A DNA stretch of 38,350 nucleotides, from the NCBI GenBank assembly GCA_000388065.2, contig KB932205.1; one strand, given 5' to 3'. This document shows, in pieces, positions 14,954-23,372 of this stretch; the stretch's first letter is position 1; each line of letters begins with the position of its first letter. The notes below the pieces were generated by a model, which saw nothing but the letters and a program-made list of their open reading frames with translations, ran no database searches and was not told the origin of the DNA. The DNA comes from Fonticula alba ATCC 38817. Its lineage: Eukaryota; Protista; Nucleariida. A program made the position numbers and the translations under genes.

Positions 14954-17381
14954 GTGCGCCCGTCGAGAGTATCTGCGCCCCGGACCGGCAGGGTGGAGGT
15001 GGAGGGGGGGGGGGGGCGGGGGGGGATATTGGCGCAAGATGGATGGAAGGCTGGGAGAGGAGCGGGAGCGGGCAAGGCCGGGCAAGGCCGGGCCAGCGAT
15101 ACACATGCGGAGCAGTGAGACGCCCACGTACCGCTTCAGCTGCGGAGCCAAAGTGGCCCCCAGATGGGCATCGACAGCCAGCTGCCGGGCGGTGAGGGAA
15201 TCGGAGCGAAGCCCGGGCGGGGCTGGCGCCAGCGCCGTTGCCCGGAGCGGGACCTCGTGCACCCTTCGCAGCCACCCACGCACCGTGGAGAAGACCACCA
15301 GCCGCCGGATGTCGATGTCAAAGCGAACCAGCAGATCCGCATGCTGGTTGGCCACGGCGGCTACCGACCGCCCCGGATGGAGGCCAGACAAAATGACCGC
15401 CATGGCCGTGAAGACTCCCAGGCGGGCCACGGGCCCGGTGGCCGGCGAAGGCGTCACCTCGACACATGGCGAGGACTGGGAATGTGGGGGTGATGGCTGT
15501 TGCGCATGCAGGGGCGCCTGGGACTGAGCCGTCAGGGGAGTCCAGTCGCCGTTGGCTGGCCCGGCACAGGTCGCCTCCAGCCACCCGGTCACCAGCGCAT
15601 GCGATCGAGGGTGCACGGCAAATAGCAAGCACTGCTCGGCGGCCGCCAGCGAGCCGAAGAATTGCCGGATAAAAGGCGTGGCCACATAGGTGTTGGAGTA
15701 CTGCCGACGTGGGACATGGGAGCAGTGAGGGGGGGGGGGGGGGGGGGGGGGGAGGGGGGGGGACAGCATGAGCAAAAAAAAACTGAGCTATGAAGGCGCA
15801 ATGCATGTGGGAAGAGGAGGGGCTCGCACTTGAAACAGGTCCGTCAGGACAACGAAATCATAGAACACCAAATGCTGGACACACTTGGCCACAAGCTCGG
15901 CATCACAATCCGAGAGATGGGAGATGGCCCGGATGGTCCGCTGACCGTTGATCAGAGGGATGACCTGACGCGGGCAGACGCGGAGAGGGGCCAGGGGGGG
16001 GGGGGAAGTGGTCAGTTCACCGTCCCGGTATGGAGAAGCGGCATGCTCCAAATGGGCGCACCTTCTGTGAGGTCAGGTCCCAGGCGGCCGAAGTGAAGGC
16101 AGGGAAGTTGGCCCCGGCCCCGGTTCCGGCCAGGCTGGCGTCCGGCTGCAGGTCATCCAGGCGGATATCCGGCATTTGAGCGCCGGGCAGAGCGCGGATG
16201 AACACCGGCACGTCATGGTCCTGAGGCAGGGGCGGCACCGGGAAGAGTTTGCGCAGCGGCAGCTTCAAGTGAAGCGTGTGCGAGGAGGCTGACAGGACAC
16301 GAAACAGGAGAGGACAAGGAGATTGGCCAGCCGGCGCCGAGAAGAGGGTCAGGGAGGGGAGGAAGGGGGGGGGGAGAGAGAGACATAGAGCAAGAGAGAT
16401 CTATGGGAAGGCGACGCACTCAGGTCGATTGTGGTTGAGCCGTGCTGATTGAGGTCATAGAAGATCTGAGACAGGACATCGCCCAAGCGGGACTTGAGTG
16501 CCGGGCGAATGAGCAGACCGTCTTCGATCTGCGCCGTGGAAGAGGCGTTAGTCGGGAAGGGACAGAGCAGGGCCAGAAGAGGAGGAAGCACGAGGAGATC
16601 CCACCGCAGCCGGGGCATGTACCTCTGCGAGTTTCAGGATACGCGTGGCCTTGCGCAGAAGCAGCTCATGGGCATAGGTGTCGGCACCCTCGGGCAGGAC
16701 AAACACCAAGTTGAAGATGAGGGCATTGCGCTCATACTTGTTGTCCTGGATCAGTGCCGGCAGGCCGAGCAACGTGACGCCATCCACGCGGCTGGCGGAT
16801 GGGCGCATGATGAGGATCAGCGGTGGGAGGGGGGGGGGAGGGGAGCGAGCTTGAGCGACAGGGGCCGAGAGAACGCACAGGGTGACCACGCGCCCACACA
16901 GCTGGGGCTTTGGGATGACATATTCGGAGATCTTGTCGAAGACACCTTGGGGGAGGGCGCCGGGGGGGGCTGCCGGGGCCGCCGGCCCGGCTTGGTCATC
17001 CCCCAGGTGCGGCGACCCGGCCGAGGCACGGAAGATGCCCGCGGACCCTGGAGCCGGAGCGCTCGGCGAGGGAGGCGGCTGGCTGCTGCCAGGGGCGGCA
17101 GAGGCCGGAGGCACGGCCGCCGTGGCCGCAAGGGCGGCCGCCACAGTCGGCAGTGGGGGTGTTGGTGGCCGGGGGGAGGGCGGCGAGGGGGGGACGCCAG
17201 TGGTGGCGGAGCTGGCGCCGCCGCTCGGGCCCCACTGGCTGGCGACCGCATCCACCGAGGGGCTCGGGGCTTGGAAGGCGATGCGTGGGCCCTGGGTCGG
17301 GTGAAACTCGGCAAAGAAGACCCCGAGCAACAGGGGATGGGCGTGAAGAGAGGACGAGGGGGAGAAGGAGGACATGCTCAT
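14954..17381 (-). CDS. NPRL2: GATOR1 subunit NPRL2/Npr2 (3' end uncertain)
   Basis: Exons 17381-16879, 16791-16623, 16528-16420, 16288-16062, 15964-15830 and 15700-15132, then an acceptor at 14973. Motifs LLGVFFAEFHPTQGPRIAFQ, FDKISEYVIPKPQLCG, KYERNALIFNLVFV, PQDHDVPVF, WDLTSQKVIPLING, KCVQHLVFY, FQYSNTY and DIRRLVVFSTVRGWLRRVH. Confidence 0.93.
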
Positions 17382-17820
17382 GGGGCGGATGTGCCGGGAA
17401 GGGAGGGGGAAGAAAAGAAAGAGAGCCGGAGGGTGAGGGGGGGACCCGGGCGTTGCAAATCGTCCCGGGCAGAATGAGAGCAATGACGGGGGGAGGGAGG
17501 GAGGGGGGCAGCGACGCCAGGTGTTGCCGCACGGGCCGGTGTCCCGGACGCCGGAGCGCCACAAAAACGACTGGCTGGGAAAGTGGCCTTCCCTGCCAGC
17601 AACCAATGCACCGGCCGGCACGCCGCACGCCCTCTCGGCTCTGAGCGGGGAAACATTGTCCGAGCCAGTGGCATCCAAGAGCGGGGGGGGGGGAATGCCC
17701 CTGTCTTGCCCCCGACGCACGGCAGCCCCGCCAATCTGAGGCGCACATCGGCAACACGCTATGCAGCCGCTCTCCGCGGCATGTGCGCGCCCCGTCTTCG
17801 CCCTGCAGGTGTGTGACCTT

Positions 17821-17853
<33 letters not shown>

Positions 17854-17855
<2 letters not shown>

Positions 17856-17937
17856 GTCGAGGGGACGGGGGACGGGCGCGATCCGAGCCCGCCCCCGGCC
17901 GCCCCGAAGCCCCGCCCCCCCCTCCGCTTGCTCCCCT
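17854..17937 (+). repeat. 84-nt segment after a poly-C run, identical to 22164-22247
   Basis: gggtcgaggggacggggg...ctccgcttgctcccct occurs at both positions; the second copy abuts an N gap. Confidence 0.9.
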
Positions 17938-18594
17938 GCCCCCCCTCCCGGAAACTCTTGCATTCCTCTTCGGGCCGGGCCCTCCCCCCCCCCCCCCCCC
18001 CCCCCCCCCGACTCCGCCCCCATGACAGCGCGAGAGCCATTCAAAATGATCGGCACCCCAGGTGGGGTCACCTTTCTTCCCGGATTGGTCGTGCTTCGCC
18101 CACAAGCCCTGGTGTGGAGACCCGGATTTGGCCTGCGGTGCCTTCCCCCTCGCGCGGACACAACATTCTCGGACACACGCCGGTGGCGGAGGGGGGAGAG
18201 ATGGCGAGGCAATACAGACACGTGCCTGTGCGCTGCAGGGAGGGGGAACAGGGTGTTGCCGCCCCCAGGAACACACACACACAAACAAGGCAGAGGGGGG
18301 GGGAGCATATGTGGACACGGATGATGGAGGGGGAGAGAGTAGGTAGAATTGTATTTGGGCGCTGCTGCTGGTGCGCATTGGGGAAGAGAGAGCGCCGGAG
18401 GGCGCGCGATGCGCCACATCACTCCACCATGAGAGAGGCGGGCGCGCAGAAGAGAGGGGAAGGGGGAAAGCACGCTTGTTGGGGCGCAAACACCCGAGAC
18501 CGGGGAGAAAAAGGCCGTCGAACTGCGGCTACGGAAAAGAGGAGGCGGTGTCAGAAAGGATGTCGAGCAAGGAAGGAGGAGGCGGAGGGCAGGA

Positions 18595-18668
18595 AGGTTC
18601 AGACAAAAAAGAACAATCAATCTACACTTGAATTTCGGATTGAGCTGGGTTGTTCAATCATCACGTTG
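18595..18668 (-). ncRNA. Box C/D snoRNA, predicted guide for 2'-O-methylation of the LSU rRNA A equivalent to yeast Am2946 (snR71 / SNORD29-like)
   Basis: Minus strand: box C GTGATGA (18664-18658); guide AACCCAGCTCA (18651-18641), complementary to conserved LSU UGAGCUGGGUU; D' CCGA (18638-18635); C' GTGTAGA (18627-18621); box D CTGA (18602-18599). The D'+5 rule lands on the A of UGAG. Box D is 76 nt upstream of the intron acceptor. Confidence 0.8.
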
Positions 18669-18956
18669 AGGGGGAGGAGGGAAGATGGATGGATGGAGAG
18701 AGAGAAACATACCAAGGGAGGGGAAGATCCACCTCGCGGCGGAGAGCAGGCGCCCCGGGGAAGATGAGGACACTGCAGGGGGATTCAGACCGGGAGGACC
18801 GGGACCGCTGCATGCACAGAGAAGGGCGGGGTCTGGATGGGGGCAATGTATGTGAGTGGGGTGCGCGAAAGGGAGGGGAGCATAAAGGCCAAGGAGGGAG
18901 AGAGGAGGATAGGGAGAGAGAGAGAGAGGGGGGGGAAATGTGGAGGGAGGAGGGGA

Positions 18957-19103
18957 GTATGTGCATGGGAAGAACAAGCTCGACGCTGGTGGAAATGCAG
19001 AATCGAGTGAAAAGCCCACGGCATTCATCTAGGCGACAGAGTGTGCTGAACGATGTCGCGGGAACATCAATGCACAAGATGAACACGCGTGCACAGCCGC
19101 CAT
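18957..19103 (-). ncRNA. Box H/ACA snoRNA candidate (about 147 nt, intronic)
   Basis: Hairpin 1 closed by GGCGGC/GUCGCC; H box AGATGA (19030-19025); hairpin 2 with lower stem CGUGGG/CCCAUG, pocket CUUUUCA / CUUGUUCUU and upper stem CUCGAU/GUCGAG; ACA (18962-18960) followed by 3 nt and then a pyrimidine tract. Confidence 0.7.
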
Positions 19104-19530
19104 GACTGGGATAGCGGGGAGGGGAGGGGAGAGGGAGGGGAGAGGGGGATACGTACGGGGATCTGCAGTGCTGCATAAGTCCGAGCGCGGAGGGGAGCGA
19201 GAAGCCGAAGAAACGCAGACGCGCGTTCTCCTCGGGCTCCTCCACCCCTGGGGATGTTTTTTTTTTTGGAGGTCCGCCTCTGGACTCAAGAGCGCCTCTG
19301 TCACGAAGAGAGAGAGAGAAAGGGGGAACACGGTGGTTTATGCACACGCGCACGAGGTGCTGCGCACACACGCATGCCCAATCCCCGAGACATGGCAGCA
19401 AAAGAGAGAGGGGAGGAGGTCACCGGCCGCACACGGGTGAGTGTGTGCGCGGACACGGGACGCATTTGTCGAGTGGCAGAGGAGGTGTAGGGAATGACCA
19501 CAGGAGGCTCGGCGCGTGTGGACCAGCTAC

Positions 19531-19537
19531 TTATATA
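19531..19537 (-). promoter_or_regulatory. TATA box of the putative snoRNA host gene
   Basis: GGTATATAAG on the minus strand in otherwise GC-rich DNA, about 25 nt upstream of a C-pyrimidine start. Confidence 0.6.
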
Positions 19538-21017
19538 CCCCTGTGGATGTGTGGCCACGGCCGCTCTCTCCCCCTGCCCCAGCGCGGGCGCAGCTAGCGG
19601 GACATGCTTACTGTCCTTGGAGCCCCTGCCGCCATCGTGAACACACACACACACACACATACACACACGCACATTGGCGCGCAAATGCACCACAGGAAGT
19701 GCGCGGCCTGGATGGATCCCAGCCACAACACACACGAATGCACCCCAACTGGACGGGCAGGGAGGATCAAGCGTCGTTCCAACAGGTGTTGCCCACCGCG
19801 AGCTTGGTCTAGGTGCCCTCTCTGACGCGCGCGCGCGCGGAGGAGTTGCCAGGGCGGGGCCCGCGTGCGCCGGAAATCGCGAGGGACCGCGGAACAGGGC
19901 TGGTGTCCGGCAGGACCATGCCATTATCCGACGTGCTGGAGAAAATTCCATTCCACGCTCGAAATAGTGGCATCGCCCGGTCCAAGCCACTGCCTGCCCA
20001 TCTGACACGCGCCTGGTCATGCGGCACGTTCTGAACCTGGCTCCAGGCCAGAGTCACAAAAAAAAACACACACGCACGGACACCGCGGAGGGGGGCGCCC
20101 AGCCCCAGCCGGCAGCCGAGGAACCAGAGCCGGCAGGGGCGGGGGGCGCTGCGCGGGAGCCGCACGAACGCAGGACGCGAGAGGGGCTGGAAGGAAGGTG
20201 GGGGACACGAAGGAGCCCATTAAATCGGCTTTTAAAAGAGGCTCGGAAAATGCCGCACTTATTCCGCCCCCGTGGCGCCCTGTTCCCGACGAGGTCGGCC
20301 TCGGGGAGTGTGCCCCAGGCGCGACGGGCGCACTCTCCCCCCGCCGCCCCGGCTCCATGCCGGGCGCGCAGGTGCGAGATCCCCATTGGAAATGGCACCG
20401 GCTTTTCGCCGTCACCCGGGGCGCGGTGGGGGCATGATTCCGCCGGGTCCTTCTCCTTCCATTTTTTTGGGGACGAACTCTTCTCCCCGAGCGGCCAGAT
20501 TCTGCCCCAGTACACTGGCGGTTCCAGGCTCACGCCCCAACCCCTCCTTGGGGGGGTCGATCTCCGCCCGCCACCGTCGCCCAGCAACTTCGTCCAGCCC
20601 GGCTGCGCAGGGGCCTCCTCGGGGAGGGGGGGGAGGGGGGAAGCAGAGCAGGACTGCTCGCCCAGCCGCCCTGGCCACCGTTACACTTCGCCGGCCGGCT
20701 TCGAGGCCAGGCCCTCGGGCCCCAGCAGGCGGGGGCAACCGGCCGGGGGCGGCCCACCGCAGGGACCACTCTCCCAGGCAGCCGCCTCCGTCCTGGGCCC
20801 GATCGGGGTCCGGCGCCCGAGTCGCAGTCTTTTCTCGTGCACCCCTGGTGTCCCACCGCACCCAAAAGATGAGACAGAGATTCCTCCCCTCCCAGTTCTT
20901 GCCCCCCCCCCCCTCCCCCGTCCCGAGAGAGAGAGATCCCCTCCCCCGGTCCGATGTGCGTGCCTTTGCCCTGCTCGATGATCATCGTTCCGCCCCCCGC
21001 CCCCCCCCCACCTCCCC

Positions 21018-21759: not shown

Positions 21760-22128
21760 GCAAGCAGTCTGCCCTGACCAAGGGCTACCTGTTCGTGTAC
21801 AATGTCGTCCTGGCCTCCGGCTGGGCTTACGTCCTGTACCTCCTCGGCCAGCACTACTCCCAGTCCCTGGCCGCCTCGCCGGTTAGCCTGGACCTCTCGC
21901 CGGCCACCGTCGGCAAGCTGACTGCCATCGCCGCTGGCGCCTACAAGAAGGTCGAGCTCCCGCTGCAGATCTTCCAGACTGCCGCCATCATGGAGGTGCG
22001 TCCTGCCTCCCCCCCCCCCCCCTCCCCCCCCCTCTCTCTCTCTGCCTTCTTCCCCCTCCCCCCCCCCCCTCCCCCTCCCCCCACCCCCCCGCTCCCTCAC
22101 CTCGCCGCCCCCCCCTCCCCCTCCTGCC

Positions 22129-22165
<37 letters not shown>

Positions 22166-23372
22166 GTCGAGGGGACGGGGGACGGGCGCGATCCGAGCCC
22201 GCCCCCGGCCGCCCCGAAGCCCCGCCCCCCCCTCCGCTTGCTCCCCTNNNNNNNNNNNNNNNNNNNNNNNNNNNNNNNNNNNNNNNNNNNNNNNNNNNNN
22301 NNNNNNNNNNNNNNNNNNNNNNNNNNNNNNNNNNNNNNNNNNNNNNNNNNNNNNNNNNNNNNNNNNNNNNNNNCCCCCTCTCTCTCTCTGCCTTCTTCCC
22401 CCTCCGCTAACTTCTCGTGTGCCACCGGCGGTCATTGTTGCCGGCCCGGGCCTCTGTCCTCCCCCTCCCATCAGGTTCTTCATGTCCTCTTTGGCCTGGT
22501 CCCCTCCCCCTTCATGACCACCCTGATCCAGGTTTGCTCTCGCCTGTTCATCGTCTGGTCCATTGGCTACTCGATCGAGCAGTCCCAGTCCCACTGGTCC
22601 TTCACCACCATGGTGGTCTCCTGGTGCATCACCGAGGTCATCCGCTACGTGTACTACGCCTTCAACCTGATTGGTGGCGTCCCCTCCCTGATCACCTGGC
22701 TCCGGTGCGTCCTGGCGCCTGAGCCTCACGCGTCGCGTGTCCCCCCCCCCCTCCCCCTCCCCCACCAGCCTCCATTCCGCGCGCACGGCACTCTTCTTTG
22801 GCTTTCCCTCTGTGTCTCCCCGGCATCGGGTGCCATGTTTATGTCTCTGTCTGACCCGCGATCCCCCCTGCCCGTGTTTCCCCCTCTCCCCCCCCTCTCC
22901 ATCTCCCTCTCTCTATCAATCTCGTTTGCCACAGCTACACCACCTTCTTCATCCTCTACCCCACCGGTGCTGGCAGCGAGTTCGTCTTCGCCTACTGCGC
23001 TCTGCCCTTCATCCAGAACATCTACCTGTACTACTTCGTCTGCTTCACCCTGGTCCTGTACTTCCCTCGTGCGTCACATGTCGGCTCCCCTGCCTTCCCT
23101 TTCCCCACGCCTCAGGGGGGCGGGGGCGGGGGGGAGGCGGGGGCAGCCCTCCCCGGGGGATGGTCTTTTCGGTCTCATGTGCTGCAAGCCGTCTGCTCTG
23201 GATCCTAACCGTCACTCCTTGTCTGCCTTCCCGTTGTCCCGTCCACCATGTCGCGCCCCTTGTCAATGCTCTCCCCTTTGCAGTCTTCCCCGTCCAGTAC
23301 TTCCACATGATCAGCCAGCGCCGCAAGTACCTCGGCCGCGGCCGTTCCTCTGGCAAGGCCAAGACCCAGTAA
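21760..23372 (+). CDS. HACD: Very-long-chain 3-hydroxyacyl-CoA dehydratase (HACD/PTPLA/Phs1), 5' partial
   Basis: Exons 21760-21995, 22475-22704, 22935-23068 and 23284-23372. Motifs YLFVYNVVLASGW, FQTAAIMEVLH, QVCSRLFIVW, SWCITEVIRYVYY, WLRYTTFFILYPTGAGSE (catalytic Tyr/Glu region) and YFHMISQRRKYL; C-terminal KAKTQ is a KxKxx ER-retrieval motif. Confidence 0.95.
22248..22373. other. Assembly gap (126 N) in HACD intron, probably false
   Basis: The sequence after the gap repeats about 22028-22058. Confidence 0.8.

What the first reader, a model, noticed from the sequence alone, without database searches (positions are those of the whole stretch)
18500..19540. Hidden non-coding snoRNA host gene with vertebrate-style one-snoRNA-per-intron layout
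The apparently empty region upstream of NPRL2 has a TATA box, a C-pyrimidine start like a 5'TOP leader, three well-formed introns and exons with no meaningful ORF. Intron 2 holds an H/ACA RNA and intron 3 a C/D RNA. Non-coding, 5'TOP, intron-encoded snoRNA hosts (SNHG1/UHG, GAS5) are well known in animals, and human SNORD29 itself sits in SNHG1. An equivalent in a unicellular lineage bears on when this organisation arose. It may alternatively be a long spliced 5' leader of NPRL2, which would couple snoRNA output to a TORC1 inhibitor.
Basis: partly seen in the sequence, partly recalled or inferred. Interest (0 to 1): 0.8.

Follow-up and report, generated by a model that had tools for sequence, protein, structure and literature searches.

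The report
Unannotated non-coding snoRNA host gene
An unannotated, spliced and apparently non-coding gene of the amoeba Fonticula alba carries one predicted small nucleolar RNA in each of its two introns; this gene layout is real here but is already known from fungi and animals.

Summary
The window is Fonticula alba scaffold KB932205.1 (100% identical). The stretch between NPRL2 (H696_03513) and a PTPLA gene has no public gene model. RNA contigs from four runs (two samples) show a minus-strand spliced transcript of at least 615 nt: 19456(-19470)..19157 | 18832..18713 | 18528..18335.

Two GT-AG introns are confirmed. The 18712-18529 intron holds a box C/D RNA. Its D' guide forms 11 Watson-Crick pairs with the large-subunit rRNA site targeted by yeast snR71 and human SNORD29. 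The 19156-18833 intron holds a plausible but unverified H/ACA RNA.

The exons show no codon periodicity, no Pfam hit and no homologue among 1.84 billion proteins. Contigs stop at 18335-18339, 11-15 nt after an AATACA hexamer. No RNA covers the ~950 nt down to the NPRL2 start codon, so the NPRL2-leader reading is not supported. The 5'TOP claim is untestable here, and such starts are no rarer than chance on this pyrimidine-rich strand.

Non-coding hosts with one snoRNA per intron are published for Neurospora. This scan noted several others in this genome, one of them followed up. Verdict: real, and a new member of a known kind.

The parts
19531..19537 (-). TATA box (TATATAA)
   Evidence: Read directly from the sequence. 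RNA contigs begin 60-110 nt downstream, with the furthest reach at 19470.
19157..19470 (-). Exon 1. The 5' end is not mapped and lies at or upstream of 19470.
   Evidence: Contiguous contig pieces: 19157-19456 (X1), 19257-19470 (X4), 19239-19446 (X2), 19239-19428 (X3).
18833..19156 (-). Intron 1 (324 nt, GT..AG), which hosts the H/ACA candidate
   Evidence: In contigs of 4 of 4 runs the pieces ending at 19157 and 18832 adjoin. Depth is zero over 18952-19115.
18957..19101 (-). Box H/ACA snoRNA candidate: 5' hairpin 19101-19032, H box AGAUGA 19030-19025, 3' hairpin 19022-18963, ACA 18962-18960, 3-nt tail
   Evidence: Constrained fold of -41.3 kcal/mol. Unconstrained z-scores are -2.45 and -2.99. 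The 3' pocket forms 13 Watson-Crick pairs with large-subunit rRNA AAGAAC-UU-UGAAAAG, placing the target U 14 nt from ACA; 21 of 500 shuffles reach this. No Rfam family matches.
18713..18832 (-). Exon 2 (120 nt)
   Evidence: Contig pieces in all four runs.
18529..18712 (-). Intron 2 (184 nt, GTATGT..GTAG), which hosts the C/D snoRNA. A candidate branch site CTGAC lies at 18554-18550.
   Evidence: Joint 18528/18713 skipping 184 nt with ends CT..AC in 4 of 4 runs. Splice-site sequences.
18595..18668 (-). Box C/D snoRNA, functional equivalent of snR71/SNORD29: C box 18663-18658, D' CCGA 18638-18635, C' UGUAGA 18626-18621, D CUGA 18602-18599
   Evidence: Rfam snR71 match of 19.2 bits, E=6, below the gathering score. 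The D' guide forms 11 Watson-Crick pairs on UGAGCUGGGUU, with the fifth nucleotide opposite the A of GUG-A-GCUGG; 37 of 1000 shuffles reach this. It is the only such candidate in the 38-kb window on either strand. The RNA lies about 44 nt from the 5' splice site and about 65 nt from the 3' splice site (box coordinates).
18335..18528 (-). Exon 3 (last exon seen), with an AATACA hexamer at 18355-18350
   Evidence: Contigs end at 18335, 18339 and 18338 in three runs. Hexamer located.

Best explanation
This is an independent RNA polymerase II gene of Fonticula alba whose useful products are its introns.

**Proposed mechanism.** A TATA-containing promoter near 19.53 kb drives a minus-strand transcript. 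Two introns are removed from it. Each intron carries one snoRNA: an H/ACA candidate in the first and a box C/D RNA in the second. By analogy with animal and fungal intronic snoRNAs, snoRNP proteins assemble on the intron. After splicing and debranching, exonucleases trim the intron to the protected snoRNA.

**Predicted targets.** The C/D RNA is predicted to guide 2'-O-methylation of the conserved large-subunit rRNA A in GUG-A-GCUGGG. This is the site of yeast snR71 and human SNORD29. The 3' pocket of the H/ACA RNA fits a U in AAGAAC-U-U-UGAAAAG of large-subunit domain I.

**Fate of the exons.** The spliced exons (at least 615 nt) appear non-coding. They probably end at a poly(A) site near 18336, about 960 nt upstream of the NPRL2 start codon.

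**Shown versus inferred.** Shown: transcription, the two splice junctions, the absence of coding signals and the absence of a public gene model. Inferred: snoRNA production, both modification targets, the transcription start site, polyadenylation and the processing pathway.
For: - **Splicing:** spliced contigs appear in four RNA runs from two samples. Depth is about 45 over the exons and zero over the sampled H/ACA part of intron 1 (18952-19115) and over the flanks 17312-18131 and 19608-20591. Genomic DNA contamination therefore does not explain the signal.
- **C/D RNA in runs:** no listed RNA run was shown to hold the stretch around the C/D RNA.
- **Genome and annotation:** the window is identical to GCA_000388065.2 KB932205.1. 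No gene is called between NPRL2 and PTPLA.
- **Non-coding exons:** GC content at codon positions 1/2/3 is flat (0.62-0.64) in all frames, against 0.68/0.53/0.79 for the NPRL2 CDS. The ORFs are one of 54 aa and an open frame with no stop before the contig end. There is no Pfam hit. The 64-aa exon-3 part of the open frame has 0 hits among 1.84 billion representative proteins.
- **C/D RNA:** canonical C and D boxes, 11 Watson-Crick pairs at the snR71 site in six eukaryotic rDNA loci fetched here, weak similarity to Rfam snR71, and uniqueness in the window.
- **H/ACA RNA:** hairpin-hinge-hairpin-tail architecture with H and ACA boxes and a pocket of correct geometry.
- **Precedent:** UHG-like non-coding hosts in Neurospora crassa (PMC2780460).
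Against: - No small-RNA data were available, so neither mature snoRNA is shown to exist.
- The H/ACA candidate matches no Rfam family. Its 5' hairpin has no convincing pocket or target. The site predicted for the 3' pocket is not a pseudouridine I know of in yeast or human.
- Both guide matches are only moderately rare against shuffles, at about 4% each.
- The 3' end rests on where assembler contigs stop. The poly-G/C runs at 17822-18009 could break assembly and hide a weak read-through into NPRL2.
- An open frame starting at 19176 happens to run in frame through the last exon and on into the NPRL2 coding exon. Long open frames occur in several frames of this GC-rich window.
- The library type of the runs is not on record.
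Confidence: 0.8

Rival explanations
1. The transcript is a long spliced 5' leader, or an upstream-promoter isoform, of NPRL2. snoRNA output and the TORC1 inhibitor would then share one transcription unit.
For: The two are on the same strand and about 960 nt apart. The frame opened at 19176 stays open through the last exon into the NPRL2 CDS. The NPRL2 5' UTR is not covered by any contig. Homopolymer runs of 26-32 nt lie in between and could break assemblies.
Against: Contigs end at 18335-18339 in three runs, 11-15 nt after an AATACA hexamer. Depth is zero over 17312-18131. No joint or loose end leads from exon 3 to NPRL2. Host depth is about 45 against about 2-4 over NPRL2 exons. The public NPRL2 model starts at 17375.
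Confidence: 0.07
2. The host is a protein- or micropeptide-coding gene that also carries intronic snoRNAs, as many ribosomal-protein and translation-factor hosts do. Candidates are the 54-aa ORF from 19465 or the open frame from 19176.
For: A 54-aa ORF starts at the first AUG of the contigs. A frame of at least 112 aa is open. The spliced RNA accumulates well above the neighbouring gene.
Against: There is no three-base periodicity, no Pfam domain and no homologue among 1.84 billion representatives for the exon-3 part. The longer frame has no stop before the apparent transcript end. Its sequence is Pro/Ser/Arg-rich, as expected from translating pyrimidine-rich non-coding DNA. The 54-aa ORF itself was not searched for homologues.
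Confidence: 0.08
3. It is a spliced long non-coding RNA whose intronic elements, or at least the H/ACA-like one, are chance look-alikes and not functional snoRNAs.
For: No Rfam family reaches its gathering score. The guide and pocket matches are reached by about 4% of shuffles. The C/D fold alone is not unusual, with a z-score of +0.27. The introns are pyrimidine-rich, which favours matches to purine-rich rRNA.
Against: The C/D element has complete boxes. It has an 11-pair guide on exactly the conserved site used by snR71/SNORD29, in register for the fifth-nucleotide rule. It lies at typical distances from both splice sites. It is the only such candidate in 38 kb. The H/ACA element has all four architectural parts in order and a 14-nt pocket-to-ACA distance. 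The confidence given is for both elements being false. The H/ACA alone being false is perhaps 0.25.
Confidence: 0.05

Closest known systems
Non-coding snoRNA host genes of animals (UHG/SNHG1, GAS5)
   Same: A spliced Pol II transcript with one snoRNA per intron and exons without a credible ORF.
   Different: There are only two introns. A 5'TOP start is not shown. NMD sensitivity is unknown. There is no sequence similarity in the exons. The host is unrelated by descent as far as can be told.
UHG-like non-coding snoRNA cluster hosts of Neurospora crassa (Liu et al. 2009, PMC2780460)
   Same: They come from the same side of the opisthokonts (Holomycota). The hosts are non-coding with only short ORFs and have one snoRNA per intron. 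The snoRNA lies at similar distances from the splice sites (41-60 nt from the 5' splice site is reported there; about 44 nt here).
   Different: The Neurospora clusters described hold only C/D snoRNAs, usually more than two. This host mixes one H/ACA and one C/D RNA. Orthology of the hosts was not tested.
Yeast snR71 / human SNORD29 (Rfam clan CL00051)
   Same: A box C/D RNA with a guide next to D' complementary to large-subunit rRNA UGAGCUGGGUU. It places the methyl group on the A of GUG-A-GCUGG.
   Different: It scores 19.2 bits against the 60-bit gathering score of RF00479. The D' box is CCGA rather than CUGA. The second (D) guide has no significant target.

Membership tests
Non-coding snoRNA host gene (UHG/GAS5/SNHG type) | Spliced Pol II transcript | tested here: met
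   Two exon-exon junctions appear in contigs of 4 of 4 RNA runs. A TATA box lies upstream.
Non-coding snoRNA host gene (UHG/GAS5/SNHG type) | snoRNAs lie in introns, one per intron | tested here: met
   The C/D RNA at 18595-18668 lies inside intron 18529-18712. The H/ACA candidate at 18957-19101 lies inside intron 18833-19156. Both snoRNAs are predictions from sequence.
Non-coding snoRNA host gene (UHG/GAS5/SNHG type) | Exons lack a conserved or credible ORF | tested here: met
   GC content at codon positions 1/2/3 is flat. There is no Pfam hit. The exon-3 frame has 0 hits among 1.84 billion representatives. The 54-aa ORF was not searched separately.
Non-coding snoRNA host gene (UHG/GAS5/SNHG type) | 5'TOP transcription start (a feature of vertebrate members) | not testable with these tools
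   No 5'-end data are available. C followed by at least 4 pyrimidines starts at 12.7% of positions on this strand, so the motif is uninformative.
Non-coding snoRNA host gene (UHG/GAS5/SNHG type) | Mature snoRNAs are released from the introns | not tested
   No small-RNA library was available. No listed run was shown to hold the stretch around the C/D RNA.
Box C/D snoRNA, snR71/SNORD29 group | C (RUGAUGA) and D (CUGA) boxes at the ends, with internal C'/D' boxes | tested here: met
   GUGAUGA at 18664-18658 and CUGA at 18602-18599. D' is CCGA and C' is UGUAGA, both degenerate.
Box C/D snoRNA, snR71/SNORD29 group | Guide of at least 10 nt complementary to the large-subunit rRNA site, with the target opposite the fifth nucleotide upstream of D' | tested here: met
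   11 Watson-Crick pairs on UGAGCUGGGUU, with the fifth nucleotide opposite the A. 37 of 1000 shuffles reach this. The site sequence is confirmed in six rDNA loci and in a yeast 25S probe.
Box C/D snoRNA, snR71/SNORD29 group | Rfam RF00479 gathering score (60 bits) | tested here: not met
   19.2 bits, E=6.1. I therefore file it as a functional equivalent, not as a scored family member.
Box H/ACA snoRNA | Hairpin-hinge-hairpin-tail architecture with an H box (ANANNA) and ACA 3 nt from the 3' end | tested here: inconclusive
   The architecture and boxes are present (AGAUGA; ACA followed by UAC) under a constrained fold. The real 3' end is unknown. The unconstrained fold pairs the H box.
Box H/ACA snoRNA | Pseudouridylation pocket with bipartite complementarity and the target 14-16 nt from the H or ACA box | tested here: inconclusive
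   The 3' pocket forms 13 Watson-Crick pairs at a 14-nt distance, reached by 21 of 500 shuffles. The 5' pocket has no target above chance.
5' leader of NPRL2 | RNA continuity or splicing from these exons into the NPRL2 coding exons | tested here: not met
   No contig, joint or loose end links them. Depth is zero over 17312-18131. A weak isoform cannot be excluded.

The most novel reading that the evidence does not exclude
A minor read-through or alternatively spliced isoform could join this snoRNA host to NPRL2. That would couple production of rRNA-modification guides to a TORC1 (GATOR1) inhibitor. Alternatively, the abundant spliced exon RNA could have a function of its own. Separately, the H/ACA RNA may guide a pseudouridine in large-subunit domain I (AAGAAC-psi-U-UGAAAAG) that is not known in yeast or human.
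Probability: 0.08. Interest if true: 0.5.

Novelty: new member of a known kind. Interest (0 to 1): 0.3.

Why it matters
It adds an RNA-supported, unannotated gene to the Fonticula alba annotation, together with a predicted guide for a conserved methylation near the peptidyl-transferase centre. With the other hosts this scan noted in the same genome, it suggests that dedicated non-coding hosts with one snoRNA per intron are common in a lineage that, to my knowledge, is sister to Fungi. That is consistent with the layout predating the animal-fungal split rather than being a vertebrate invention. This agrees with what the Neurospora work already implied, so it refines the picture rather than changing it.

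Tried and rejected
- **Rfam at gathering thresholds on the whole window:** nothing.
- **Rfam on the H/ACA stretch alone:** only chance-level miRNA and lncRNA hits.
- **First protein search with NPRL2 exon 1:** no hits. I suspect low-complexity words and the length window were the cause. A repeat using the 'region' option succeeded.
- **Second run search, on the stretch around the C/D RNA:** it returned only runs added by species label, under a different coded organism. None is shown to hold the stretch, so they were not used.
- **D guide of the C/D RNA:** the best matches are reached by 340 of 1000 shuffles. An 8-pair match to AAAAGAAC places the target at the duplex edge. I claim no target.
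- **5' pocket of the H/ACA RNA:** no target above chance under two pocket models.
- **Joint 16845/18906 and loose ends at 18911-18934 and 18287:** these are 20-24-nt matches of unrelated, often very deep contigs to (CT)n and (GT)n low-complexity tracts, so I dismissed them.
- **Loose end at 17191 in NPRL2:** I checked whether it marks a possible upstream exon. Its letters occur nowhere in the window.
rejected as a constitutive intron, because four contigs run through it.
- **Synteny in relatives:** not attempted. The only other NPRL2 hit was a distant chytrid-labelled protein at 40% identity.
Full report
**Identity of the DNA**

A search with the conserved part of the NPR2-domain exon returned "hypothetical protein H696_03513 [Fonticula alba]". 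The locus fetched for that protein, GCA_000388065.2 scaffold KB932205.1, is identical to the window over all 14,240 bases.

In the public annotation the NPRL2 CDS runs from 17375 to 15136 on the minus strand. The next called gene upstream is a PTPLA-domain gene at 22514-23372 on the plus strand. Nothing is called between them.

**Transcript evidence**

Four RNA runs of 2012 (two samples, one study) hold 32-40% of the sampled words of 18300-19600. Laid on 16000-20900, their contigs give one consistent minus-strand structure.

X1 record 2 is 615 nt long at depth 44. It maps as:
- 19456-19157 (record positions 1-300)
- 18832-18713 (record positions 301-420)
- 18528-18335 (record positions 421-614)

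X2 record 6, X3 record 12 and X4 record 19 show the same two junctions.

- **Joint 18528/18713** is tabulated in all four runs (skips 184 nt, ends CT..AC, which is GT..AG on the minus strand).
- **Joint 18832/19157** is evident from adjoining record coordinates. The tool notes that one joint row was dropped at a repeat.

Depth is zero in the bin 18952-19115, in 17312-18131 and in 19608-20591. Genomic DNA in the libraries therefore cannot explain the signal.

Contigs in all four runs cross it. Its sites look acceptable for this genome: NPRL2 donors are mostly GTGCGT, and this one is GTGTGC. Minor alternative use cannot be excluded.

**Transcript ends**

- **5' end:** the furthest 5' reach is 19470 (X4). 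That is 61 nt below the last base of the TATATAA at 19537-19531.
- **3' end:** three runs end at 18335, 18338 and 18339, which is 11-15 nt after an AATACA hexamer at 18355-18350. This fits a poly(A) site, but it rests on assembler contig ends.
- **Link to NPRL2:** no contig, joint or loose end connects exon 3 to NPRL2.
- **Relative depth:** the host depth is about 45, against about 2-4 over NPRL2 exons.
- **Caveat:** a 121-nt repeat and two homopolymer runs of 26 and 32 nt lie between the two genes. They might hamper assembly of a weak read-through RNA.

**Coding potential**

The spliced RNA holds a 54-aa ORF from the first AUG. It also holds a frame from 19176 that has no stop before the contig end. 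That frame happens to remain open down into the NPRL2 CDS. Long open frames occur in several frames of this GC-rich window.

| Sequence | GC at codon positions 1 / 2 / 3 |
|---|---|
| Host exons, every frame | 0.62-0.64 (flat) |
| NPRL2 CDS | 0.68 / 0.53 / 0.79 |

The exon-3 part of the frame has no Pfam match. It has no hit at E up to 0.001 among 1.84 billion representative proteins.

**The C/D RNA (18668-18595)**

- **Boxes:** C box GUGAUGA at 18664-18658, D' CCGA at 18638-18635, C' UGUAGA at 18626-18621 and D CUGA at 18602-18599.
- **Rfam:** the only family found is yeast snR71, at 19.2 bits. That is far below the gathering score. However, the guide and D' region align at high posterior probability.
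- **Target material:** I fetched eukaryotic rDNA from metagenome contigs by an exact 23-nt large-subunit motif. Six loci hold both relevant sites, reading GGGAACGTGAGCTGGGTTTAGACC. A published yeast 25S probe carries the same core, GGGAACGTGAGCTGGGTTTAGACCGTCG (PMC8044721).
- **D' guide:** it forms 11 contiguous Watson-Crick pairs with UGAGCUGGGUU. The fifth nucleotide upstream of D' lies opposite the A of GUG-A-GCUGG. Of 1000 shuffled guides, 37 do as well anywhere on the rDNA unit.
- **Target assignment:** this is the snR71/SNORD29 site (yeast Am2946), by my own knowledge and by the Rfam family matched.
- **Specificity:** a scan of both strands of the whole window for C...D pairs with at least 10 Watson-Crick pairs to rDNA finds this element alone.
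- **Position in the intron:** the RNA lies about 44 nt from the 5' splice site, about 65 nt from the 3' splice site and about 44 nt from a CTGAC branch-like motif. These spacings are in the range reported for intronic snoRNAs (PMC2780460).
- **D guide:** it has no significant target.

**The H/ACA candidate (19101-18957)**

With the H box and tail kept single-stranded, the fold has four parts in order:
- a 70-nt 5' hairpin closed by GGCGGC/GUCGCC
- a hinge with AGAUGA (an ANANNA motif)
- a 60-nt 3' hairpin closed by CGUGGG/CCCAUG
- ACA followed by 3 nt

The unconstrained folds are more stable than shuffles, with z-scores of -2.45 and -2.99.

The 3' pocket (CUUUUCA and GUUCUU) pairs with 13 Watson-Crick pairs to large-subunit rRNA AAGAAC-UU-UGAAAAG. 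This is the LR2R primer site (PMC9311397). The target U falls 14 nt from ACA. Of 500 shuffles, 21 reach this.

The 5' hairpin has no convincing pocket or target. No Rfam family matches. I rate this element as probable, not established.

**The 5'TOP claim**

No 5' end was mapped. On this strand a C followed by four or more pyrimidines begins at 12.7% of positions. A TOP-like string near the TATA box therefore carries no information.

**Comparison with what is known**

Non-coding host genes with one snoRNA per intron are classical in vertebrates (UHG, GAS5). They are also described in Neurospora crassa. There, 45 of 55 C/D snoRNAs are intronic, and five conserved clusters sit in UHG-like hosts with only short ORFs (PMC2780460).

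No paper in the library treats Fonticula snoRNAs. The only two papers that hold both terms use the species as an outgroup.

This scan has noted several other such hosts in the same genome. One was followed up and reached the same conclusion. This locus is therefore a new, RNA-supported member of a known kind.

**Verdict**

The main interpretation is supported and the NPRL2-leader alternative is not. Novelty is modest.

Noticed in passing
window 17817-17937 and 22127-22247: A 121-nt direct repeat (98% identical) that begins with a poly-C run of 32-34 nt. One copy lies between the host gene and NPRL2. The other abuts an assembly gap (N run 22248-22373). It may be a dispersed repeat or a gap-edge assembly artefact.
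   Followed up: partly
window 19256 (minus-strand A run at about 19256-19266): RNA contigs of X2 and X3 carry one extra T (plus strand) behind 19256, so the run is A12 instead of A11 in the transcript. This is either a homopolymer length difference or sequencing slippage.
   Followed up: no
window 16878-16790 (NPRL2): The public NPRL2 model removes an 87-nt in-frame stretch as an intron (the model goes from ...GRVVTL straight to RVDGVTLL...). The genome reads through it without a stop. Contig coverage there is too thin to decide which is right.
   Followed up: no
whole window: Homopolymer G or C runs of 12-34 nt occur about once per kilobase (35 runs of 12 nt or more, almost all G or C). Six N gaps interrupt the scaffold.
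   Followed up: no
window 18595-18668 and 18963-19022: The D guide of the C/D RNA (GUUCUUUU) and the 3' pocket of the H/ACA RNA (GUUCUU) are both complementary to the same large-subunit domain I segment (GAAAAGAAC). The C/D match is not significant by itself. This could be coincidence from pyrimidine-rich introns, or two guides aimed at neighbouring nucleotides.
   Followed up: partly
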